A DNA stretch of 64,000 nt from Takakia lepidozioides (taxonomy: Eukaryota; Plantae; Bryophyta). The position numbers and the translations under genes were made by a program. The notes under the pieces are model-generated. The model was not told the DNA's origin. It did no database searches and saw only the letters and a program-made list of their open reading frames with translations. The stretch lies in the NCBI GenBank assembly GCA_030704615.1, contig CM060731.1, positions 16,058,001 to 16,122,000 on the forward strand. The letters run 5' to 3'. Each line of letters begins with the position of its first letter. The first letter of the stretch is position 1. Of the stretch, positions 29,101-57,208 are shown piece by piece.

Positions 29101-31553
29101 CATGTGGCAGTTGCTGGAAAAGAGGGACCCAATGGAAGCAGAAGTGCAGGGATTGCGCTTTCAGCTGCAAGAGATGGGGCGTCATCAGGTGCAGTTGGAC
29201 TGTTTTCAAAATGCTCTAACACAACAAAAAGTTAACGCAAAGACATCAACTCTCTTGCAGGCATAATCTGGGCTGATGGGTGATGGCCATTATCTGCACT
29301 TGTGTTGTTTATGACCATCTTGCCCTCCCTCTCTATTCTTTGCTGAGATGAAATGGTGCAAGGCCACAGATTTGCGTTAAAAATCAAAGAAGAAACAGAA
29401 ATGTTGTCCAACACCTTGGTGGGCCAAGGAAAATCCCAGGCAGGGATTCTAAGGTCCAGCCTCCCACAAAAGATTTTGACCAGAGGCCAGGATGGAATGA
29501 TGAAGTCAGTCAGCCAGACATATTGTTAGGTATTTTTGTGCTTAGTTGGCTAGTGACTCCTTAACCTGTTATTGATGAGCCATAAGGAAAATGGAGGCCA
29601 CAAGAGAGACCTAATCCTGCATGAAGAATGTTAAGATGTGAGATGTGCAGTGGAGAGGATTTTGAGTACCTTTCAGATGCAGTTCATGATGTGTTTCTGG
29701 ATGTCTTTTCCTACTGAGCAGGCAGGCCATATGAAGGATATGAAAGAGGCTGGTAGACTGGAACAGCAGTTGAAGGCAAAATCGAGAGTCCAAGAGACCC
29801 AGATGAAACAGCTGCAGCACAAGCTCCTTGAGCGGGAATCCTTTATCAACACATTTTCTCACACACTGTGCCAGATTATTGAGGATCATGATGAGACAGA
29901 GTGGTCAAAACTCACCAAGGACCTCTACATGGTCTATGTTGCTGATGTCCACCTTGCAATGAATTCCGAAGGTTTTGAATCCCAAGAGCAAATACTGCAC
30001 CAACGGTAAATCATAGCTGCCTTGTGCAAGTTCTTACATCTGAAGTAGTCAATCTGTCAATCGGTTTTTGAGATTAGATTTCAGAATGGCCCCCATGAGC
30101 TTCAGGCCCTAGGATCCAACAGAAGCAAAGAACAAAACTTGGCAGCTCTGCACTAACAGTGTGCTCCATAGTGATTCTTTAAATGGTTATTTAGCAGGCT
30201 TGTCCAGGTGCACTTTGCAGCCTCATGCTGCATTGTCTTGTGACTGGACATGCCCATGTAAGACTGAAATGCCCAGTGCTGTTTGGTCACCTTGAACCAT
30301 GATGTGTTGGAATGACTCAACCTCACTTAGTTATATAAGTCCTTATTTTAACTGGTATGCATAACCTTATGCATGTTGGGCCAGGAAAACACTCGAAAGA
30401 TTTGTGGTGGTGCTGCAGGAGGCAATCACTCGGAAAGACAAGGAACATGCACGTGAAGCACTGCGGTTTGTCCAGGAAAACTTGCGTCTGCTCCATGAGT
30501 TCTCTGACTCCACCCGAAATGTCCGACGCTTGGCTTTTCTGGTTAAGGAGCTCCAGGTATTGTAGGGCCCTGAGTTTGTTTATGGACTTATAACTCATCT
30601 GATGCATTTGATAGATCAATCTGAGGAGCCTATGCACCTAATCCTTCTCCTTCCTTTGCAAACACTTCAGACTTATATGACTTCTGGGAATGGTCCAGTA
30701 AAGTCTTTACCGTTGAAAATGCGTCTATTGGACGATTGGTGTGAACTTTGTTTTTTGGTCAGATGACTTTTGGGGTGTCTTCGTGTTTTGTCAATTGTGT
30801 GACATACTGTTCTCATATCAATAGGTCTTTTGGTGGTAAAGTTGAAGGCTTCCAGTTTCCCATTCCTACTCTTGCCAGTTATGATTCTTTTGTAAAATAT
30901 TCTAATAAGATCTGGCTGGGAACCTTCTGCAGGGAGAAGTGGCGTACTTCAAGGCAGTTGCTGCAAAGCACATATCTGCAACTTCTTCCACCCTCTCTCG
31001 AATGTCTCAGTCAAGGATGAGCACATCTAGCCCCCCTCCCAATCAATGTCGTTCACAATCAGTCCTTAGCAGACAAATCTCAAGGTTTTCTTCACCTTTG
31101 CCCCCTCAAAATATAAGTGTGAAATTTGACCCTGAGGCTTCTGTCCTTGAGCAGCTGCGAAAGCAAACAAAGTCAACCACCCCTATATCTCAGATAATCA
31201 AACCTTACATGCACCGGGGGTCTATAGCAAGACATACATCCATGCGCCACAGCATGACACGGCCATTGTCAACGGAGCCTGAAGGGCATCAGTGGTCTGT
31301 GAGCACCCCTGATGTTTCCCTTGCCTTGGCCGTGAGCAAACATGAGCTCAAGAAAAAAGAGGAAGAGATTGAACAGTTATACACAACTCTACACCGCCTC
31401 TCTGCCCACCCATACTTAACTCCAGAAAATCAACTAGCTGGAGTTGCTTCAGTACCGACATCTGCAGGAATGGATGACAGCCAATCCAGTAGCACCACTG
31501 GACTTAACAGTGGGGAGTCGTCAGCCAGCACCAGCCAGCCTGCAAGTGCTTAG
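8189..31553 (+). CDS. CFAP57: CFAP57/WDR65 (FAP57)-like cilia/flagella WD40 + coiled-coil protein, multi-exon; 5' end uncertain
   Basis: Exons in the order of CFAP57 motifs (approximate bounds): 13868-13949 (VTHVTVNPEDSEEFGSSG), 14461-14648 (GPTHFKLW...HIWLTDNSIALAT), ~15134-15252, ~18080-18225 (GAVTDMDVCLQRMLIMTCGKDKVVRLWSY), 18781-18876 (FDEEPLAVAISGYQMVVGFSNSIKVY), 19300-19441 (MRWSPSGHMLAV...IIMTLK), 20196-~20520 (GHMAAVSSIAWSSDSIYLSSAGADGTVYSW), ~21070-21236, ~21836-22062. Coiled-coil exons follow at ~23783-23977, 24903-25112, ~27925-28145, 28514-28672, 29722-30005, 30419-30557 and 30933-31553. Tentative 5' exons 8189-8292, 8511-8566 and 8724-8836 join in phase but are weakly supported. 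Confidence 0.8.
8935..10560 (-). mobile_element. Degenerate non-LTR retrotransposon of the (TTTCA)n-tail family, longest copy
   Basis: The minus strand encodes FRV.SHRLWIETEK...CP.C...EIESEEHLFFH...YEIRGR...YEDQK.LAAYLHDALTLR plus the family 3' UTR. Decayed endonuclease-like sequence lies further upstream (weak, boundary approximate). Confidence 0.7.
12450..12760 (+). mobile_element. Ty3/Gypsy aspartic-protease relic
   Basis: Remnants LLIDG..NI and ISMTILQIEDMVSMYRLLLGRAWLQQA resemble the retroviral-type protease motif Y.LLLGRPWL; frameshifted. Confidence 0.5.
13130..13803 (+). mobile_element. Two tandem 3' fragments of the (TTTCA)n-tail LINE family
   Basis: First copy: HDICGRFNCPF...YEDQKWLTAYLHEGLTSRQSLEQ* plus UTR to ~13396. 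Second copy follows immediately: RALGRFRVVSHSHWIEAGK...HFFFHCPHYDEICGRF...LAAYLHEALTLRQSL, UTR and (tttca)n. Confidence 0.85.
17925..18043 (+). mobile_element. 3' stub of the (TTTCA)n-tail LINE family
   Basis: Same UTR motif (cccataagctctttgagatttccgtggatgttatag) and a degenerate tail. Confidence 0.75.
21328..21452 (-). mobile_element. 3' stub of the (TTTCA)n-tail LINE family (antisense)
   Basis: Reverse complement reads cataagctctttcagcttcc...tataaagctcca...(tttca)n. Similar decayed antisense stubs lie at ~24440-24572 and ~9310-9440. Confidence 0.7.
27221..27790 (+). mobile_element. Three head-to-tail 3' fragments of the (TTTCA)n-tail LINE family
   Basis: EHFFFYCPLYYEIRGRFHCLF...YEDKKCLAAYLHEALTFRQSLEH* plus UTR/tail; near-identical repeat at 27474-27640; third stub at 27645-27790. 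Confidence 0.9.
28811..28885 (+). mobile_element. Minimal 3' stub of the (TTTCA)n-tail LINE family
   Basis: tctatgagctttccgcggacgttataaagcacc followed by (atttc)n. Confidence 0.8.
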
Positions 31554-32453
31554 TGATGGAGGGTTGAGGAGCTGATACAATCAGTGCCTCTGGACAGATG
31601 GTGTAAGACAGAGACCTGACTCATCCCTGTATTTTTAATGGTGTGGGCAAGATGTGGAGCTCCACATACAGGGTTCAAAGCTAGCCCACCAGTGATGCTT
31701 GAAGTAATACATGAGGTGTTCCTGGAACTGGTAATGCAAGGAGCCAACCTGCCAGTAGATAACAGTTAAGTTGAAATATGGCTGAGAGATATGTCAATGT
31801 AAACCTACAAAAGCAATTTCATTCAGATTCACAATCCGAAATCAAGAACTGACTGATGTCTCTGATGAATATTGTTGTTGCTTTCCAAAACATCTGTCTA
31901 TTTCCATGGATGTTCTGGTTCTAATCAATTTCATGACATGAGAAGTCTTTGCACAAGATATATTTATATATATGCAAAACACCAAAAGCATTCTTCACAG
32001 ACAAGAAATCTACAAATGGTTTGGGATCTTCAGTTGGTAGACTTGTCTTGTTCTTCGTTTGCAAGATCTGGAGAACCCATCATTTTCCACAATTCCTCTT
32101 CTCAACCTGCAAGAGCAGACTTGCTCCCCTAACCCAAAACCTTAAACTGATTTCTAAATACATAGTGGCATGGTTGATGTTTACTAAACCTGCCTTAGGA
32201 ACCGAATCAACTGGGGGTCTATTGTTGGGCTCATGTGGCCACCCCATGTGTGGCCAACCATCCACTAACTTACATCGTCATCATGTCAACTTTGTCACCT
32301 TCACTCAAGCTGACTTTTTTGGCCAGTAACCAAAAGACATGAAATGAGAGACTCGGAAGCGTCCTACCTGGCTCATCCTGTTGTCCACCCACATCTAAAC
32401 TTTTCAGAAATTTTGGGCAAGTTCTTGGGGTGTCTCGCACTGATCTACAAGAG

Positions 32454-33380
32454 ATGGGTGGCATGGCAGCGCCCGCTCCTGTTCTGCTGAGATAGGTCTT
32501 ATCCATGGTCCTGTCTTGGTCTTGCAGTGAGCGGGCGGGAGATATCACATGCAGAAGGTTAACGGGCCAGGTTGTGGAGCGGAGATGGACATTCAGCTTG
32601 ACGATCCAGGGCCTGAGACCCTTCTGGGTGATGGCTCTGACCACTCCCCAGCTTCGAAGAGACCAAAAGGTAGGGGCGTGGGTTTTTTGGCTTGCTTGTC
32701 TGGGGAGCATAAGTTACAGTCATCTGGGTCGTAGAGTTCCCTTTTCGCTCACAGTAGAGTGTCACTGTCTTCCTTCTACAAGCTCCAGCACTATCTGCGG
32801 AAAATATCCAAAATTTCTGGTAGGTTTCCCTTGCATGAGAGAGGGATGATAGTTATTCTATTCTGGTTTTGCCATAGCCATGTGAAATATGCTCTCTATG
32901 GAAATCCCGCAGAGACTGAGGGAATCAGGTAGTTCTTGCACGTCGGGAAGTCAATGAAGCATGGAACGACTCAGACAGGAATTTTTCTCAGATCCTTCCC
33001 AGTGGTGGGACAACAGGTTCGATAAGGTGAGGGTATCTTCATTCTGCAACGGAATACTTGTTTGACTTGGGATGATCATGTTTTGTGACTGGATTGCATC
33101 AGTGGCAGTTTTGCTCTTTTAGCGGAGTGGGAAGCCTCAAGCTTTGGTATTAGTGTGGGCCATGTTTGAAGTTAGAGCTGCTTATTGCCCACTGGTGCTT
33201 TTCACAGAGAAGTCAAAGATCAAGACATAAGTGCACAAATGAGGGCCTTCAGATTGAGGGTTACTGGAATCCTGCCTCAATTATTGCAGAGTTATCAGCA
33301 ATGATACAAGGGCCAGGACAAAGCGGTGGTGGTGCCAATGGCAGTGTACACCATGGAGCTGCAGGCCGAGAATACAAGAG
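32454..33380 (+). CDS. Upstream exons of the PPR-DYW gene: transit-peptide-like leader (with in-frame stops) and OSB-type PDF motif
   Basis: Exons 32454/32505-32819 (ctg|gtaggt, phase 0), 32913-33026 (cag|aga ... aag|gtgagg, phase 0) and 33208-33380 (cag|aga ... ag|gtattg, phase 2) join in frame to 33659. They encode MERLRQEFFSDPSQWWDNRFDK|RSQRSRHKCTNEGLQIEGYWNPASIIAEL. In-frame stops: TAG at 32493 and TGA at 32955. Confidence 0.75.
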
Positions 33381-33658
33381 GTATTGTCTTGATGGTGATG
33401 CAAGGGTGCCAACTTAAACAGATTCTTTTGTACAGTTATTTGCAAAGCGTATGATTACCATTTGATTTAGAACCCTATTATAATGGAGCAAGGAACCTGT
33501 CCTCTAGAAAGCATCATGAGTTCTGCACGTAAAATATTTTGACGACCTGGAAGACAGTTGTATGTTCTTGAATTGTTATTCTCTGGACTATCTATCTAGG
33601 AGGTTTTAGATATCATCTGAAAATAAGTGTAAAGGTTTGGGTGTTTTATTGCATGCAG

Positions 33659-36479
33659 GATGGCAGGGGTGATTCAGGCACCTTTGTTTGAATCAGGCAC
33701 CTCCACTGCTTTTCAAAGAGGAGCAAGAGAGGGAGTCAACAACAGGTCTTCTCATACTTATGTGGATGTGAGGATATTGTGCAAGGCTGGACATCTAAAA
33801 GAGGCACTGCAGCTTTTGAACCAACAAGGCTTGTCAACAGACTCCAACACTTATGTCTGTCTCTTGCAGGAGTGCATCAAATTTAAGGATCTAGCTGTTG
33901 GGAAGCAGGTGCATGCGCATGCTATCTTCTCTGGGTCCAAGCCAAACACTTTTTTACTCAACACCCTTGTCAACATGTATGCCAAGTGTGGGAGTGTTGT
34001 GGATGCCCGCAAAGTGTTTGACAAAATGCCTGAACGAGATATGTCTACATGGAATATTATGATAGCAGGATATGCCAAGCATGGGTGTGGTACAGAGGCT
34101 TTTATGATTTATGAGCAAATGCACCGGAAAGGGGTAAGCCCCAACAAGATCACATTCATTTGTGCTCTCAATGCTTGTACTACCCCTGGAGCTCTGGAAA
34201 AGGGCAAAAAGGTCCACTCGGACATCATCAAAACTGGAATTGTGACGGAGGTGATTCTGGAGACTGCCATTGCTGACATGTATGTCAAGTGTGGGAGCAT
34301 GAAGGATGCACGTCAAGTTTTTGACAATATGGCTAAACGAAATGTGATCTCATGGAGCGTGATGATCGCAGGATATGCTCAGCATGGCTGTGGTGGGGAG
34401 GCTTTGGAGATCTATGAGCAAATGATACAGAAATGTGTGAAGCCCAACAAGGTGACATTTATCTGCGTTCTCAAGGCATGTGCCAGCCTAGGAATCCTGG
34501 AAAAGGGCAAAGAGGTACATGCTGACATCATCAGAGCTGGAATTCTCCCGTATATCAATCTGGAGAATACCCTTGTGCACATGTATGCCAAGTGCGGGAG
34601 CCTGAAGGATGCACGTGAAGTGTTTGACGAGATGGCTGAACGAGATATGGTCTCATGGAATGCGATGATTGCAGGATATGCTCAGCATGGGTATGGCAGG
34701 GAGGCTTTCGAGATGTATCAGCAAATGCTACGGGAAAGGGTGCCGCCCGACAAGGTCACATTCATTTGTATTCTCAATGTCTGTGCCAGCCTGGCAGCCC
34801 TGGAAAAGGGCAAAGACGTGCATGCTGCCATCATCAAAGCTGGAATTGCACCATATATTAATCTGGAGAATACCCTTGTCAACATGTATGCTAAATGTGG
34901 GAGCATGAAGGATGCACGGCAAGTGTTTGACAATATGGCTCACCGAAATGTGGTCTCATGGAGTGCAATGATTGCAGGATATGCTCAGCATGGTTGCAGT
35001 AAGGATGCTTTTGAGATGTACGAGCAAATGCAACAGCATGGGGTGATCGCCGACAGGGTCACATTCACTTCCATTCTCAATGTGTGTGCCGTCCTGGCAG
35101 CCCTGCAGAGGGGCCAAGATGTCCATGCAGACATCATCAAAACGGGCATTGCACCAGATATTATTCTGGAGAATGCCCTTATTAACATGTATGCCAAATG
35201 CGGGAGCATGAAGGAGGCATGTTATGTATTCAACAGTATGGCTAAACGAGATGTGGTTTCATGGAGTGCGATGATCGCAGGATATGCTAAGCATGGCTGT
35301 GGTAAGGAGGCTTTTGATATGTATGAGGCAATGACATGGGAAGGGTTGACACCTGACAACATCACATTCATTTGTGTTCTCAATGCTTGTGCTAGCCTAG
35401 CAGCCCTAGAAAAGGGCAAAGAGGTTCATGCTGACATCATCAAGGCTGGGGTTGTGCCATGCATTAATTTGGAAAATACCCTTGTTAACATGTACGCCAA
35501 ATGCGGGAGCGTGAAGGATGCACGTCAAGTGTTTGACAATATGAATGAACGAGATGTCATCTCATGGAGCGCAATGATCACAGGATATGGTCAACATGGC
35601 TGTGGCAGGGAAGCTCTCCAAATATTTGAACAAATGCAACAGGAAGGCTTCAAATCAGACACAGTCGCCTTTATATGTCTTCTCTGTGCATGTAGTCATG
35701 TGGGACTGATAGATGAAGGGCATCACTACTTTTATTCTATGAGTCATGATCACAACCTCACTCCCACGGTGGAGCATTTTGGCTGCATGGTGGACCTTCT
35801 TGGTCGTACAGGGCAATTGGATGAAGCAGAGGACCTCATAAACAGAATGCCCATCGAACCAGATGGTTCGGTGTGGGGGGCCTTGCTTGGTGCCTGCAGG
35901 ATTCATGGCAATGTGGAGCTAGCAGAACGTGCAGCAAAATGCCTTCTCAAGTGGGATCCACAAGATGCTGCAACTTATGTGCTGCTCTCGAACATCTATG
36001 CTGCTGCTGGGAGATGGCAAGATACAGCCAAGGTGAGAAAAATGATGCAGGACAGAGGTGTCAGAAAGGAGCAAGGGCTCAGCTCCATTCAAGTGAACGA
36101 CATAGTGCATAAATTCAGTGTGGGAGACAAATTGCATCCAAAAATTGGGGAGATCCATGCTGAGCTGAAGAGATTATCTGAGCAAATGAAGGAGGCTGGG
36201 TATGTTCCTGACACTTGCTTTGTATTGCATGACTTGGAGGAAGAGCAAAAGGAATTGTCTCTTTGCCACCATAGTGAGAAACTGGCCATTGCCTTTGGAC
36301 TCATCAGCACACCCCCCGGGACGCCTGTCCGCATCATCAAGAACCTTAGGGTGTGTGGTGACTGCCATATGGCCATCAAGTTCATTTCGAAGATTGTGGA
36401 GCGAGCGGTTGTGGTACAGGATGCCAACCGCTTTCACCACTTCCAAGATGGGGTCTGTTCTTGTGGTGGTTACTGGTAA
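33659..36479 (+). CDS. PLS-class PPR protein with E1/E2 and DYW cytidine deaminase domain (terminal exon)
   Basis: 939-aa ORF with six ~101-aa L-S-P triplets (MYAKCGS..DAR.VFD.M), P2-L2-S2 and E motifs. The zinc-binding motifs HSEKLA and CGDCH are intact and the protein ends FHHF...CSCGGYW. A splice acceptor gcatgcag|g lies directly before the ATG at 33660. Confidence 0.95.
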
Positions 36480-37392
36480 AAATAGGGTGGAAGAACGCGC
36501 ACTTCTGTAAGCATGATAAAGCAAAGTACATGGAAAGAGCTTCAAAAGTGATGGGCAGTATATCACTTTCTGTGAGCTGAATGCAGCATCAAACAGCAGC
36601 ATCGAGGCGACTGGAATCCTTGTTGCAGAGGAGGTTTTGACAGAGTGCAATGAACTGTACGCATGAAGAAAATTTGTCATTTATAGGGGTTGAAAGTTTC
36701 TGACCAGGGAACTTGGGGTCAATTTTCGCTGTAGGCACTAACACATTTCAATACAGGTGGACACCTATTTCTTCTACCTGAGACTTACAAATAGATTGCT
36801 CTTGCTTAGGGTAAGTGGGAATCAATATAGAAGTCTAATTGGTCCATCTTTCAGAACCTGAAATAGCAGTTTGAGGTCTACTTTTTCTTGCAAGCTGGTT
36901 TCTAGCCTGGCTGGGAATGGCCCATCAGAGGAGGAGGGCACAGTGTTTGACAGTCAAGGTAATCTAGGGGAAGCTAGTTATGTCTGTTGAGGGATTCTGG
37001 GAAGCTTGAAGTCAAAAGACTACTTTCGATTCCCTTGCATTGTTTCGAATGACGAGTGAGTAGTAATGACTAATGACTACAAATGGATGGTTCTTTTATT
37101 GATTTCTAAGCATTATCACTCAACCTGAGTGTTTGGCAGTGCAGTGTTAGGGAGTATTCTTTCACTCACCAAGTCACAAGAATGCACAAAGGCCCAGGCT
37201 AGCACACAATGAACCTAGACCTGTTGGTTTACAGGACAGTGAGAGCCACTGCTTATGACCCCTGACAAGCGTGTTCCAACCTGTACCACCTGCACGCAAT
37301 CCAGGTACAGTGCTGTTATAGAGCCCATGCATCCACAAGGATTCAAGGATTCTAAGAACTGGCCGTTGTCTCTAACGCCCTTAAAATTCAAT

Positions 37393-54400: not shown

Positions 54401-57208
54401 TCTTTGTAGGCTTCCAAGGACTGAAGAACTTAGATCAAAGATTGGCAGACTACAGCAAAGAGCAGCAGGTGTCCACATTCAGTTGACCCATTGTTACGGA
54501 GGAGAATATGTATTATGTCCCATAAATTCTGAAGTGTAGTAGTTGCAGTCGTATTTCCAATTACGTTGTATGACCTGCCCATCAGAGCTCAGATTAGTGT
54601 CTAATACGATGTACCGTCTGTTCAATAGGCTATATAAGCAAGTTGATCTTACAGCAACTTCAATCAGTTTCCTCTGTTGAAAACAATTTTTGTTGCTCAC
54701 AGGGAGCAGGACCAGAAAGGGATACAGGTGTGGGACTTCTGTGATGAGGGCTCAGTGGCAGCTGCGTCTGCCATGTTGGAGAATTTCAAGGTGATTGAAA
54801 GTGGGAAAACATGTTCACAGTACATCAGCAGACAATCTACAAGTGGCTCCAGGGGGCACTATTCCCTACCTGTTCATTTCAGCAGAACTGTCAGGGCTCA
54901 GTTTTGGCAGGATGGTCTAAACTTATCTGATTGCATTGATGGTGGTTCAATGTCTTATCAGAGAGAGTTTGGGGTTGCAAAAGCAGAGACTGGTTTCTAT
55001 CCTTCGCATACTGAAGACAAATGGGAGTCATTAGAGGAAGATGTATTACTTGCTCTACACGCGGCTGCCAACTGCTCTGATTCTCGCCGAAGGACTCCCC
55101 TACACGTGGCAGCAGCCCGTGGGGATGTCCCCATGGTAGCAGGCTTGCTTGCAATTGGTGCTGCTGCAAAGGGGACGAAAGATTCTGCAGGTGCAACAGC
55201 TTTATTTGTGGCAGCTGAGTGTGGCCACGCACACATCTGCGAACTACTGCTAAGAGAGGGTGCTGAAGTATTGGCCAGCAACAGGGCAGGAGAGACTCCA
55301 CTCTACATTGCGGCTCTAAGGGGTCACTCAGCATCTGTAGGGGTTATGCTGACCCACTGCCATGAGCGCGGGCTGAATTGGCAGGATGCTGATATCTATG
55401 GTATGCCCCTTTTACCCCACATCGTACCTTCTTTTCGGGGTCACAATGTTTCGAAAAGCTGGGCAAAACTGGTTTCCTATCCTATTCCAGGACTTCCATG
55501 CCCGTGCCTTCCGGTCAGCCATCGCAGCAGGGTGACCCCCACCCATGTCTGGGAGCCGACCGGTGGACACCTGCACGGGAGCCAGGTGGGATCCCTGCCT
55601 TTTAACCCTGTTCCTGTATTGCAGTTGGGAGATTGGTGGTCGTAAGTTCATGTATTTTGCATGGAACTAAGGCTCTTCACCCGTCAAATCTTGAATCTGG
55701 CGACCTTATGTGTTTGCTCCGAAGAAGAAAAGATTCTGCTAGAAATGATGTACTGTGTTGTTCATCATCCATGTTAGAGCCCCATGTCCATCTACAAAAC
55801 TTGGGGCTGCCAGTTTTATGTGGTTCCGCTCTCATGCACTAGTATGTGAGCATGGAAGCTCCCACATGTAGAGTGTCCAAGCTTGCTGGCCTCACACCCC
55901 AATCCTCTACACTTCCATGGCCATGATTCTTTGCAGCTTTCTCCTGCCATGATTGCCTTGGGGCTTGTCCTCAAATCATGCCACCTGTTCAATCCATCAA
56001 TCTTCTTTGGTGGATGAGTAGTGTGTGGACCAAATTTAGACCCGCTAGCAGCGCGGCTGGCAGCCCCATTCATGCCTGAAAATACGCCACCAAGTCCTTC
56101 ATCAGTGCAGCAATGTTCCAAACTGTAAACCATATTGAGGTGAGTAACAAGGTGATTGGCGGATGAAACAGGTGATGGATGGACCCCTCTCATGGCAGCC
56201 GCTGTTGCAGATCGGCAAGATGTGGGAAAGGTGTTGCTCTGGGCTGCAGGAGCTGACTTGGGCATGGGGCCTTCCCACACGAACGAGCCTGTAGGTGACA
56301 AGAGGACTGACACTTTTCAAGAAGAGAGTGACAAGCTCAACGGCTCACATTTGTCAATGAGGAGAAATGACACAGGCAAGGAAGGGCTGGAAGGTACTAC
56401 CTGTGCACCCACCCACTTGAAGAGTAATTCCAGAAAGATTTCTAGTAAGAGTGGTAGAGAAGGGAAGTTGGCCCTCGCTATGCGGCCTCCACCTCAGCTG
56501 CTCGATGCGCAAAACCGCTATGGGCAGACTGCGCTTCATATAGCAGCTCGAAGAGCATCAGTATGGTTTGTTGTGAACCTCCTGAGATCAGGAGCTTCCT
56601 TGGAGGTGAGAGATGCATATGGCATGTGTGCTGTCGACGTTGCAATCCGCCAAAACCACACTGTTATTATTGACATCTTGAAACAGTGGGAGTCCTTTCA
56701 ACAGAAAAGGGTCGATGGCCCTTCTGCTGCGGCAGCCCGGCTGTCTCCAGCTGCATTGGACAAACCTGCTCCTGATATGGTAAAACGGTCCTCGAAATCG
56801 AAAGTAGTGTGGGTACCGAAGTCTGCCTCTCCCGAATCTGCAAATGCACTAACAGACCAACCACGCTTTCCTCCATCCTCAGATATTATTCAGGATCCAA
56901 GCTGCATTAGTCCTGGTTTCTGTACCACCGTGAGGGAGGATTCGGAATGTTGTCTGAAGGGCACCTTGGCTGGAATCGAAGGGTTATGGTCCAAGATTTC
57001 AAGCGGACATGCAGTCAGTGCAGGACATGGGTTAGGTATTTCGGACAGGAACAGCGTTGTTGAAAATAATATCTTAGGACTAATACAAGAAGCACGGTTG
57101 AAGGGTGACAGTAGAGAGGCTCATGGAGGCAACAAGCATTATTGGAGAGGGAGGGGAACACGCCGGCGCGTCTTTCCTGATAGTCGTGTTATTTCATCTA
57201 ACCCTTGA
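51470..57208 (+). CDS. F-box + leucine-rich repeat + ankyrin-repeat protein (6 coding exons)
   Basis: Phase-compatible GT-AG exons: 51470-51759 (F-box ITDLPVVVLGSILARI...VLCACRLFW), 52522-52701 (ELDLAGCP...LERLILDGCQKL), 53008-53353 (LSLQRCYRL, LRVLALHNC), 54009-54205, 54703-55400 (RTPLHVAAARG, ATALFVAAECGH, ETPLYIAALRGH) and 56172-57208 (GWTPLMAAA, GQTALHIAARR). Confidence 0.85.

What the first reader, a model, noticed from the sequence alone, without database searches (positions are those of the whole stretch)
32454..36479. Hidden N-terminal exons fuse an OSB-type 'PDF' ssDNA-binding motif to a PPR-DYW cytidine deaminase
Seen: exons 32913-33026 and 33208-33380 have canonical splice sites and matching phases and join in frame to the 939-aa PPR-DYW exon. 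The product reads MERLRQEFFSDPSQWWDNRFDK-RSQRSRHKCTNEGLQIEGYWNPASIIAEL-(Gly-rich linker)-PPR array-E-DYW, 1019 aa from ATG 32961. Established: W..FF..P..WWDNR..K.NP..PDFKHK.T..ALW is the PDF motif of plant Organellar Single-stranded DNA Binding (OSB) proteins, which binds ssDNA. Canonical editing factors carry only a transit peptide before the PPR array. Inference: this may belong to a class of editing factors tethered to organellar nucleoids or R-loops for co-transcriptional editing, or a deaminase with access to ssDNA. An ORF-only annotation misses the fusion completely.
Basis: partly seen in the sequence, partly recalled or inferred. Interest (0 to 1): 0.85.

Follow-up and report, generated by a model that had tools for sequence, protein, structure and literature searches.

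The report
Eroded OSB-type motif on PPR-DYW gene
The hidden upstream exons are real and spliced in frame onto a PPR-DYW RNA-editing-factor gene, placing it in a large family of non-seed-plant editing factors that carry an OSB-type "PDF" motif and that I found described in no paper, but in this copy the motif has lost its P-D-F core and three conserved tryptophans, so it probably no longer works.

Summary
Observation confirmed. Transcript contigs from public runs carry all three GT..AG junctions: 32669/32913, 33026/33208 and 33380/33659. One 419-nt contig spans exon 1, exon 2 and the PPR exon. From ATG 32961 the frame stays open to TAA 36477-36479.

The peptide is homologous to the OSB PDF motif. 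A profile of 50 OSB motifs hits exon 1 at E=1e-7 and exon 2 only at E=0.3, collinear with it.

The fusion is not unique. 126 long PPR proteins retrieved here carry intact N-terminal PDF motifs of 76-90 bits. Most are from the lycophyte Diphasiastrum complanatum; others are from Sphagnum, Ceratodon and Calypogeia. A metagenome plant contig has an intron at the same motif position. Pfam has no PDF model, and I found no paper describing the architecture.

This copy is eroded. It keeps 3 of 8 invariant motif positions, with W4 to R, P-D-F deleted and W39 to Q. Its PG box reads QGLSSIQ. Seven upstream ATGs precede ATG 32961, and an in-frame TGA lies two codons before it.

Verdict: a real spliced fusion and a real, apparently undescribed family, but a degenerate exemplar. 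The nucleoid or ssDNA tethering idea is untested. First readers noted the same architecture twice elsewhere in this genome (unchecked).

The parts
32377..32669 (+). Exon 0, a 5' leader exon whose true 5' end may lie further upstream. It holds six upstream ATGs (32454, 32463, 32505, 32549, 32585, 32631).
   Evidence: X1 record 2 lies on 32377-32667 with 0 mismatches and continues 70 nt into exon 1; the joint is also in X2. ATG list.
32493..32495 (+). TAG in the same frame as ATG 32454, ATG 32505 and ATG 32961. It closes the 13-codon ORF that starts at 32454.
   Evidence: present in the transcript contig (record 2, 0 mismatches).
32670..32912 (+). Intron 0 (243 nt, GTAGGG..CAG).
   Evidence: joint 32667/32911 (cut +2), GT..AG, in X1 and X2.
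32913..33026 (+). Exon 1. 32913-32960 is leader, with an out-of-frame ATG at 32954. 32961-33026 encodes MERLRQEFFSDPSQWWDNRFDK, the first half of the PDF motif.
   Evidence: OSB-PDF HMM 29.4 bits, E=9.8e-8, profile positions 2-23. PPR-family N-terminal HMM E=2.5e-11; bin depth 572 in X1 against about 17 in the flanks, so many paralogous transcripts share this exon at 95% or more.
32955..32957 (+). In-frame TGA two codons before ATG 32961. It ends the 69-codon upstream ORF that starts at ATG 32505 and runs across the exon 0/exon 1 junction.
   Evidence: covered by X1 record 2 with 0 mismatches.
33027..33207 (+). Intron 1 (181 nt, GTGAGG..CAG), phase 0, inside the PDF motif after the invariant Lys (K21).
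   Evidence: joint 33024/33206 (cut +2); contig L002 has an intron at the same motif position and phase (WWDHRSEK|GTAAGT).
33208..33380 (+). Exon 2. 33208-33300 encodes the eroded second half of the PDF motif (RSQRS-RHKCTNEGLQIEGYWNPASIIAELSA), with P-D-F missing, W39 to Q and W48 to S. 33301-33380 encodes a Gly-rich linker.
   Evidence: 8.7 bits, E=0.29, profile positions 31-56. E=2.5e-6 against the PPR-family N-terminal HMM; invariant columns.
33381..33658 (+). Intron 2 (278 nt, GTATTG..CAG).
   Evidence: X1 record 3 joins 33378 to 33657 (same +2 ambiguity).
33659..36479 (+). Coding part of exon 3: PLS-type PPR array, E, E+ and DYW domains, and the stop codon TAA at 36477-36479. The transcript continues beyond 36800.
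   Evidence: contigs cover 36425-36800 and run over the end of the stretch laid.
36072..36092 (+). PG box position (residues 805-811 of the 939-aa ORF). It reads QGLSSIQ instead of PGxSWIE.
   Evidence: P805Q, W809S, E811Q. Q at 805 or at 811 occurs in 0 of 127 relatives.
36198..36476 (+). DYW deaminase domain. HSE and CGDCH are intact; the C-terminus is GYW.
   Evidence: PF14432, E=1.6e-42, residues 847-939. D937G, with G shared by 5 of 127 relatives.

Best explanation
This locus is a transcribed four-exon gene. It belongs to a large family of PLS-class PPR proteins with E or E-DYW C-termini that carry one to three OSB-type PDF motifs between a presequence and the PPR array. The family is found in non-seed land plants and is best represented by about 100 clusters in the lycophyte Diphasiastrum complanatum.

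The module was most likely captured once, early, from an OSB-like gene. An intron inside the motif has been kept since.

In this copy the PDF module is eroded. The first half, on exon 1, is well kept. The second half, on exon 2, has lost P-D-F by a three-residue gap, and W4, W39 and W48 are replaced. In the predicted mini-domain (helix, strand, strand, short strand, helix) the gap removes the start of the second strand and W39 lies in the third. The module therefore most likely no longer folds or binds single-stranded nucleic acid.

The message has a long leader with seven upstream ATGs and an in-frame TGA two codons before ATG 32961. The N-terminus from 32961 is acidic and unlike a transit peptide. 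The PG box of the deaminase part is also divergent.

I therefore read the gene as an expressed paralog under relaxed constraint. At best it makes a PPR-DYW protein of 1019 aa (from 32961) or 939 aa (from 33660) whose PDF remnant is a relic rather than a working ssDNA tether.

Shown: the exons, the splicing, the homology, the family, and the lost residues. Inferred: loss of function, which start codon is used, a single capture, and any tethering role in intact relatives.
For: Splicing and frame.

PPR-E-DYW identity.

Homology to OSB PDF. A profile from 50 motifs of named or SSB-domain OSB proteins hits exon 1 at E=9.8e-8 and exon 2 at E=0.29, collinear. The triple-PDF region of Diphasiastrum PPR protein P0049 hits named OSB1, OSB2 and OSB3 proteins at E=1e-15 to 1e-23.

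Family. 17 of the top 120 relatives of the PPR ORF carry PDF motifs. All 153 long proteins found with the P0053 PDF region are PPR proteins. 126 PDF+PPR proteins of 550 aa or more were collected, with 98, 20 and 7 of them carrying one, two and three strong motifs, and 52 carrying a DYW signature.

Collinearity: the three window exons match the family's N-terminal profile in order, at E=2.5e-11, 2.5e-6 and 1e-10.

Shared intron position.

Erosion. Only D16, K21 and L38 of the 8 invariant columns are kept. The halves score 29.4 and 8.7 bits, against a family median of 83.8 and a 5th percentile of 76.

Fold of the intact motif: pLDDT 94.1.

PG box and 10 deviations in 96 conserved columns, against a median of 4.

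Upstream ATGs and stops; both stops are present in RNA contigs.

Depth is high on exon 1 but not exon 2, so paralogs share exon 1 only.

All three RNA-versus-genome differences in the ORF are nonsynonymous.
Against: The frame from 32961 is still open over 80 codons across two introns, and the loss of P-D-F is a clean in-frame gap. Some constraint on the extension, or a very recent change, therefore cannot be excluded.

The 939-aa PPR-DYW ORF is fully intact, with HSE and CGDCH present.

12% of relatives deviate as much in the E/DYW region.

The comparison set of intact motifs was retrieved partly through PDF words, so it is biased toward intact copies.

No ortholog or same-genome paralog sequence was available for dN/dS.

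The runs are only guessed to be RNA, and two junctions rest on a single run.

Nobody has tested which PDF residues are needed for binding. The inference rests on conservation and a predicted fold.
Confidence: 0.6

Rival explanations
1. One reading: the 1019-aa protein is a working editing factor whose N-terminal PDF-like peptide still binds single-stranded DNA or RNA. It would tether the deaminase to nucleoids or R-loops, or give it access to ssDNA.
For: The spliced in-frame fusion is real. The first half of the motif is well kept, at 29.4 bits. The frame is open across exons 1-2. ATG 32961 has a strong context. Intact relatives show that the architecture is maintained in many genes. PDF motifs are reported as responsible for ssDNA binding in OSB proteins (PMC4166229, PMC6963530).
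Against: Five of 8 invariant motif positions are lost, including P-D-F and two Trp. The second half scores 8.7 bits. There are seven upstream ATGs and an in-frame stop just upstream. The N-terminus is acidic and unlike a transit peptide. The PG box is divergent.
Confidence: 0.12
2. The upstream exons are now only 5' UTR. Translation starts at ATG 33660 and gives the 939-aa PPR-DYW protein. The PDF-like reading is a relic of former coding sequence that happens still to be open.
For: ATG 33660 has a strong context. The leader is loaded with upstream ATGs, and the ancestral frame is closed by TAG 32493 and TGA 32955. The motif is eroded. Residues after M33660 are Ser/Thr/Arg-rich with few acidic residues.
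Against: A ribosome that reaches 32961 meets a strong in-frame ATG first, and four more ATGs lie in exon 2 before 33660. There is no stop between 32961 and 33660 in the spliced frame. Only about 35 residues precede the first PPR-like repeat, which is short for a presequence.
Confidence: 0.3
3. The whole gene is a transcribed pseudogene or dying paralog, with no functional protein at all.
For: There are parallel signs of relaxed constraint in three separate parts: the PDF motif, the PG box (Q at 805 and 811 seen in 0 of 127 relatives) and the leader. All three transcript-versus-genome differences are nonsynonymous. The family is very large, so redundancy is plausible. k-mer depth of the unique parts is low.
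Against: A 2.8-kb ORF without any stop or frameshift, with the catalytic HSE and CGDCH intact. All three introns are correctly spliced. 12% of relatives deviate as much.
Confidence: 0.3
4. The junctions come from DNA of a processed retrocopy elsewhere in the genome, not from RNA of this locus.
For: The type of both runs is only a guess.
Against: Depth is about 0 in all introns and in the intergenic stretch, while exons and the neighbouring gene's 3' end are covered. The runs hold only 33-49 million letters of contigs. Exon-side matches have 0-1 mismatches.
Confidence: 0.04

Closest known systems
[quoted passage not shown] Arabidopsis OSB1-4; Zaegel et al. 2006 as cited in PMC4166229 and PMC6963530)
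   Same: They share the roughly 55-residue PDF motif. The OSB-derived profile recognises exon 1 (E=1e-7), and PPR-borne intact motifs score 71-90 bits. The motif is reported to mediate ssDNA binding.
   Different: OSB proteins have a central SSB-like OB fold with the PDF motifs at the C-terminus. Here there is no OB fold, the motif is N-terminal to a PPR array, and in this copy it lacks P-D-F.
PLS-class PPR-E-DYW RNA editing factors of land-plant organelles
   Same: PPR array, E, E+ and DYW domains, with HxE and CxxCH present.
   Different: Canonical factors carry only a transit peptide before the array (general knowledge). This gene has spliced 5' exons encoding a PDF remnant, a divergent PG box (QGLSSIQ) and a GYW end.
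Uncharacterised PDF+PPR proteins in public protein sets, e.g. Diphasiastrum complanatum O6H91_07G017300 (P0053), O6H91_13G002800 (P0097, three PDFs), Ceratodon purpureus M758_7G001800 (P0055), and Sphagnum and Calypogeia fissa proteins
   Same: Same order of parts, the same sequence around the start (MEQLWQEFFSDPSQWWDNRF...), the same linker leading into the first PPR (KLCQEGRLKEAL against ILCKAGHLKEAL), and an intron at the same motif position in L002.
   Different: Those proteins have intact motifs (76-90 bits), usually a 100-300-residue N-terminal extension, and a canonical PG box. The best identity to the window's PPR part is only 54-57%, so none is an ortholog.
PPR proteins with accessory domains (PPR-SMR, PRORP with NYN, PPR-LAGLIDADG; general knowledge)
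   Same: A PPR array combined with a second nucleic-acid-related module.
   Different: A PDF motif as the accessory module appeared in none of the papers I could search.

Membership tests
PLS-class PPR-DYW editing factor | Tandem PLS-type PPR motifs | tested here: met
   PF13041 4e-112, PF01535 1e-102, 13 stretches.
PLS-class PPR-DYW editing factor | E (E1/E2) and E+ motifs after the array | tested here: met
   PF20431 7e-19 (residues 749-811). PF20430 scores 21.5 bits (2e-4), just under its 24-bit cut-off.
PLS-class PPR-DYW editing factor | DYW deaminase domain with zinc ligands HxE and CxxCH | tested here: met
   PF14432 1.6e-42. HSE and CGDCH are read in the sequence.
PLS-class PPR-DYW editing factor | PG box (PGxSWIE) at the start of the deaminase region | tested here: not met
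   the box reads QGLSSIQ. P805Q and E811Q are seen in 0 of 127 relatives, and W809S in 2 of 127.
PLS-class PPR-DYW editing factor | C-terminal D-Y-W tripeptide | tested here: inconclusive
   The protein ends in GYW. D is present in 93% of relatives and G in 5 of 127.
PLS-class PPR-DYW editing factor | Organellar targeting presequence and C-to-U editing activity | not testable with these tools
   No targeting predictor or assay is available here. The N-terminus from 32961 has five acidic residues in its first 22 (sequence).
OSB protein family | SSB-like OB-fold domain | tested here: not met
   no PF00436 on any exon product. Nothing else is coded between exon 0 and the PPR array.
OSB protein family | [quoted passage not shown] | tested here: not met
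   The single motif remnant is N-terminal.
PDF motif (module) | Significant match to a profile built from OSB PDF motifs | tested here: inconclusive
   the first half scores 29.4 bits (E=9.8e-8) and the second half 8.7 bits (E=0.29). Profile positions 24-30 are absent. The joined peptide was not scored, by rule.
PDF motif (module) | Invariant residues W4, D16, K21, P27, D28, F29, L38, W39 | tested here: not met
   D16, K21 and L38 are kept; W4 to R, P-D-F absent, W39 to Q. Also W48 to S and K30 to R.
PDF+PPR fusion family (apparently undescribed) | PDF motif, linker and first PPR collinear with family members | tested here: met
   exons 1, 2 and 3 match profile positions 97-120, 128-186 and 172-235 at E=2.5e-11, 2.5e-6 and 1e-10.
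PDF+PPR fusion family (apparently undescribed) | Phase-0 intron after the invariant Lys inside the motif | tested here: met
   L002 has the same position and phase; L001 lacks the intron. Only two loci were compared.

The most novel reading that the evidence does not exclude
PDF+PPR fusions form a large, ancient class of organellar RNA editing factors in lycophytes, mosses and leafy liverworts, overlooked so far. In this class an OSB-type single-strand-binding mini-domain, linked by a flexible spacer to the PPR array, holds editing factors on nucleoid ssDNA or R-loops, or on nascent RNA, so that editing is coupled to transcription. The window gene would be a copy that has dispensed with the module. 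Because relatives with intact and with eroded motifs exist, the idea can be tested directly.
Probability: 0.25. Interest if true: 0.8.

Novelty: new variant of a known kind. Interest (0 to 1): 0.6.

Why it matters
Plant organellar editing factors are thought of as a transit peptide, a PPR array and E/DYW domains. How they find transcripts inside nucleoids, and whether editing is co-transcriptional, remain open questions.

This work shows that in at least one lycophyte more than 100 PPR proteins carry one to three copies of the OSB PDF motif at their N-terminus. The same holds in Sphagnum, Ceratodon and a leafy liverwort. The PDF motif is the element reported to bind ssDNA in OSB proteins.

Pfam has no model for the motif. 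The latest OSB survey keeps only proteins that also have an OB fold (PMC13393729), so the architecture goes unrecorded.

The finding gives a concrete, testable handle: compare binding, localisation and editing with and without the module. It also warns that ORF-only or incomplete gene models cut the module off. The window's own copy matters mainly as a natural eroded control, not as the best exemplar.

Tried and rejected
1. Upstream presequence. By eye, the in-frame text upstream of ATG 32961 (exon 0, and exon 1 before the TGA) looked like the linker and half-PDF that precede the motif in Diphasiastrum proteins. The family profile gave negative scores, so I do not claim it. What remains is that one frame runs ATG 32454 ... 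TAG 32493 ... ATG 32505 ... junction ... TGA 32955 ... ATG 32961.

2. Pfam on the exon peptides and on a triple-PDF region gave no family.

3. The fold of the intact motif has no solved relative. Foldseek gave no hit, and the VIA-align wide search gave a best Z of 2.6.

4. Fetching Diphasiastrum genomic loci to compare intron positions failed because those proteins are not on record. Two metagenome plant contigs were used instead.

5. The hypothesis that exons 1-2 are the 3' end of a separate upstream OSB-like gene ending at stop 33417 is rejected. The upstream gene's transcript ends near 31840-31890, and one contig joins exon 1, exon 2 and the PPR exon.

6. Literature. No paper in the held library links PDF or OSB motifs to PPR proteins. 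The original OSB paper (Zaegel 2006) is not held, so an early remark there cannot be excluded.

7. The census by representative search lists only the 150 best of 1400 hits. These are dominated by multi-PDF proteins, so the PPR share among all 1400 is unknown.

Each exon was handled by reference or as a six-frame fragment.
Full report
**1. Observation**

The 939-aa ORF 33660-36479 is a textbook PLS-class PPR protein with E, E+ and DYW domains. Pfam gives PPR_2 4e-112, E motif 7e-19 and DYW deaminase 1.6e-42.

- cag|A at 32912/32913
- aag|GTGAGG after 33026
- cacag|AG before 33208
- gag|GTATTG after 33380
- tgcag|G before 33659

The coding lengths are 66, 173 and 2818 nt, which is 1019 codons from ATG 32961.

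Two public runs of the same organism, from two studies, hold about half and a third of the stretch's sampled words. I laid their contigs on 30900-36800. They show GT..AG joints at 32669/32913 (both runs) and at 33026/33208 (run X1). A single 419-nt contig lies contiguously on 33206-33378 and 33657-33867 and has 35 further letters in exon 1. All three junctions are therefore seen, two of them in one run only.

The runs are only guessed to be RNA. Depth is nevertheless zero or near zero in the introns and in 31885-32278, while exons and the neighbouring gene's 3' end are covered. I take the contigs as transcripts.

There is a further 5' exon (at least 32377-32669) spliced to 32913. The upstream gene's transcript ends near 31840-31890, so the exons do not belong to a separate upstream gene.

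Every search, profile score and comparison was done exon by exon, by reference or on six-frame fragments.

**2. Is it a PDF motif?**

Pfam has no model for the motif: there was no hit on the exon peptides or on a triple-PDF region of a relative. I therefore fetched real OSB proteins.

The N-terminal triple-motif region of a Diphasiastrum PPR protein (P0049:130-370) hits proteins named OSB1, OSB2 or OSB3, most with the SSB domain PF00436, at E=1e-15 to 1e-23. From 50 motifs of such OSB proteins I built a profile.

Among 3234 six-frame fragments of the window, the exon 1 fragment is the only significant hit: 29.4 bits, E=9.8e-8, profile positions 2-23. The exon 2 fragment is second best: 8.7 bits, E=0.29, positions 31-56. 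The two are collinear, and positions 24-30 (NPKaPDF) have no counterpart.

A profile of the N-terminal regions of 71 PDF+PPR relatives matches exon 1, exon 2 and the start of exon 3 in order, at E=2.5e-11, 2.5e-6 and 1e-10.

Homology is therefore established. The motif here is half strong and half weak.

**3. The fusion is a family**

Of the 120 best relatives of the PPR ORF (best identity 54-57%, mostly Diphasiastrum complanatum), 17 carry PDF motifs N-terminal of the array. One example is P0011, which starts MEQLWQEFFSDQSQWWDNRFTKKSPKYPDFKHKSTLEGLWIDGWLNPSWVKENMAS.

A search with the motif region of P0053, restricted by design to proteins of 555-1766 aa, returned 153 clusters. Every listed one is a PPR protein. 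About 100 are from D. complanatum; the rest are from Sphagnum species, the liverwort Calypogeia fissa and metagenome plants.

98 of them have one strong motif, 20 have two and 7 have three. 52 show a DYW signature. The motifs always lie toward the N-terminus.

A profile search of 1.84 billion representative proteins finds 1400 clusters with PDF motifs. The 150 best are biased to multi-copy proteins. They split into 75 OSB-like, 5 PPR and 70 with neither domain detected.

Gene structure supports common descent. In a metagenome plant contig (L002) the motif is split by a phase-0 GTAAGT..AG intron right after WWDHRSEK. This is the same place as the window's intron after WWDNRFDK. A second contig (L001) has the motif uninterrupted.

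A tree of 47 motifs puts 29 of 30 PPR-borne motifs in one group nested among bryophyte OSB motifs. Support is only 90/76 on 55 columns, so a single capture is compatible with the data but not shown (no rows left out).

I found no paper that links PDF or OSB motifs with PPR proteins. The newest OSB survey keeps only proteins with both an OB fold and a PDF domain (PMC13393729). The original OSB paper is not held.

First readers of this scan noted the same architecture at two other places in this genome. I did not check those notes.

**4. This copy is eroded**

In an alignment of 47 motifs from OSB and PPR proteins, the invariant positions are W4, D16, K21, P27, D28, F29, L38 and W39. Nearly invariant are P11, W14, W15, R18, K30, H31, K32, P46 and W48.

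The window peptide keeps D16, K21 and L38. It has R at W4, a three-residue gap where P-D-F should be (RSQRS-RHK against KSPKYPDFKHK), Q at W39, S at W48 and R at K30.

The intact motif is predicted with high confidence (pLDDT 94.1) as a small domain of helix, strand, strand, short strand and helix. No solved relative was found. The gap removes the start of the second strand, and W39 sits in the third.

Intact PPR-borne motifs score 76-90 bits against the OSB profile. The window's two halves score 29.4 and 8.7 bits.

Transcript depth fits this picture. The bin holding exon 1 sums to 572 in X1, against about 17 for the unique flanks and 11 for exon 2. Many paralogous transcripts therefore match exon 1 at 95% or more, but not exon 2. 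Depth from contigs is only a rough guide.

**5. Other signs of relaxed constraint**

- The spliced leader holds seven ATGs before 32961.
- The frame of ATG 32961 is closed by TGA 32955-32957 two codons upstream.
- The same frame read backwards through the junction is open to ATG 32505 (a 69-codon upstream ORF). It is closed again by TAG 32493-32495 after a 13-codon ORF from ATG 32454, which has a strong context.
- Both stops lie in a transcript contig with no mismatch.
- Relatives usually have 100-300 residues before the motif. The window protein would start directly with MERLRQEFFSD..., which is acidic and unlike a presequence.
- My impression that the upstream text is homologous to that region of relatives failed the profile test and is withdrawn.
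- In the last 240 residues the window deviates at 10 of 96 columns that are at least 85% conserved in 127 relatives. The median for relatives is 4, and 12% reach 10.
- Three of those deviations lie in the PG box (QGLSSIQ for PGxSWIE). Q at 805 and at 811 is seen in none of the 127 relatives.
- HSE, CGDCH and the 2.8-kb frame are intact.
- The three differences between transcript contigs and the genome inside the ORF are all nonsynonymous. The sample is tiny.

**6. Reading**

This member is a degenerate one.

The most likely account (about 0.6) has two parts. First, an OSB-type PDF module was captured early in land-plant evolution by a PLS-PPR gene and maintained in many descendants. Second, in this paralog the module, and possibly the presequence, has decayed while the PPR-DYW body is still open and expressed.

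Three questions remain open and are listed as rivals: whether the body still works, which ATG is used, and whether the gene is a dying paralog.

The tethering or co-transcriptional editing idea is plausible for the intact relatives. PDF motifs are reported as the ssDNA-binding part of OSB proteins, which prefer ssDNA over RNA (PMC4166229, PMC6963530). It is untested and is unlikely to apply to this copy.

**7. Novelty and score**

The gene is a PPR-DYW family member with a module that I found described in no paper and for which Pfam has no model. The proteins themselves sit in public databases as hypothetical proteins. I rate it a new variant of a known kind.

Interest is 0.6. At the family level this would surprise a specialist and is directly testable. 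It is lowered because this exemplar is eroded and no function was shown.

Noticed in passing
P0344 (1160 aa), P0345 (908 aa), P0346-P0348 (representative library): Proteins with 9-13 tandem PDF motifs. P0344 also matches my OSB OB-fold profile; the others have no Pfam domain at all. PDF arrays much longer than the one to five copies described for OSB proteins exist.
   Followed up: partly
P0377 (1526 aa): A kinesin motor protein (PF00225 2e-86) with three PDF stretches and a hit to the OSB OB-fold profile. It is either a further PDF architecture or a chimeric gene model.
   Followed up: no
window 33674 (table 7): One X1 contig matches from 33674 onward but has 255 unrelated letters before it. 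The break is 15 nt inside exon 3, not at the acceptor 33659. It is probably a paralog's transcript, but an alternative 5' end is not excluded.
   Followed up: no
window 33772, 35091, 35746: Transcript contigs differ from the genome at three ORF positions, all nonsynonymous (R38T, V478I, H696R). 35746 differs in both runs. These may be alleles, strain differences or near-identical paralogs.
   Followed up: partly
window 33860-36400 (table 5): Many non-GT..AG 'joints' inside the PPR ORF, skipping 330, 331, 349, 630, 931 nt and similar, with foreign letters between. They fit contigs of paralogs and the roughly 101-residue P-L-S repeat unit rather than splicing.
   Followed up: no
window 30930-31890: The 3' end of a neighbouring + strand gene. 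A 3214-nt transcript contig ends at 31838. The Ser-rich ORF 30939-31553 has no Pfam hit.
   Followed up: no
window 54677-57208: Two + strand ORFs (322 and 350 aa) with ankyrin repeats (PF12796 2e-15 and 2e-10), probably exons of one ankyrin-repeat gene.
   Followed up: no
P0014, P0016, P0053, P0063, P0082: Many Diphasiastrum PDF+PPR proteins carry, upstream of the intact motif, a half-motif remnant (e.g. TRKEALWINNRFNPPWVHARL, 11-18 bits). Erosion of extra PDF copies is therefore common in the family.
   Followed up: partly
model me608f5cbd8c9: The intact PDF motif folds in AlphaFold2 at pLDDT 94 into a 55-residue domain of helix, strand, strand, short strand and helix. It has no match among solved structures (best Z 2.6). 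No experimental structure of this ssDNA-binding module seems to exist.
   Followed up: yes
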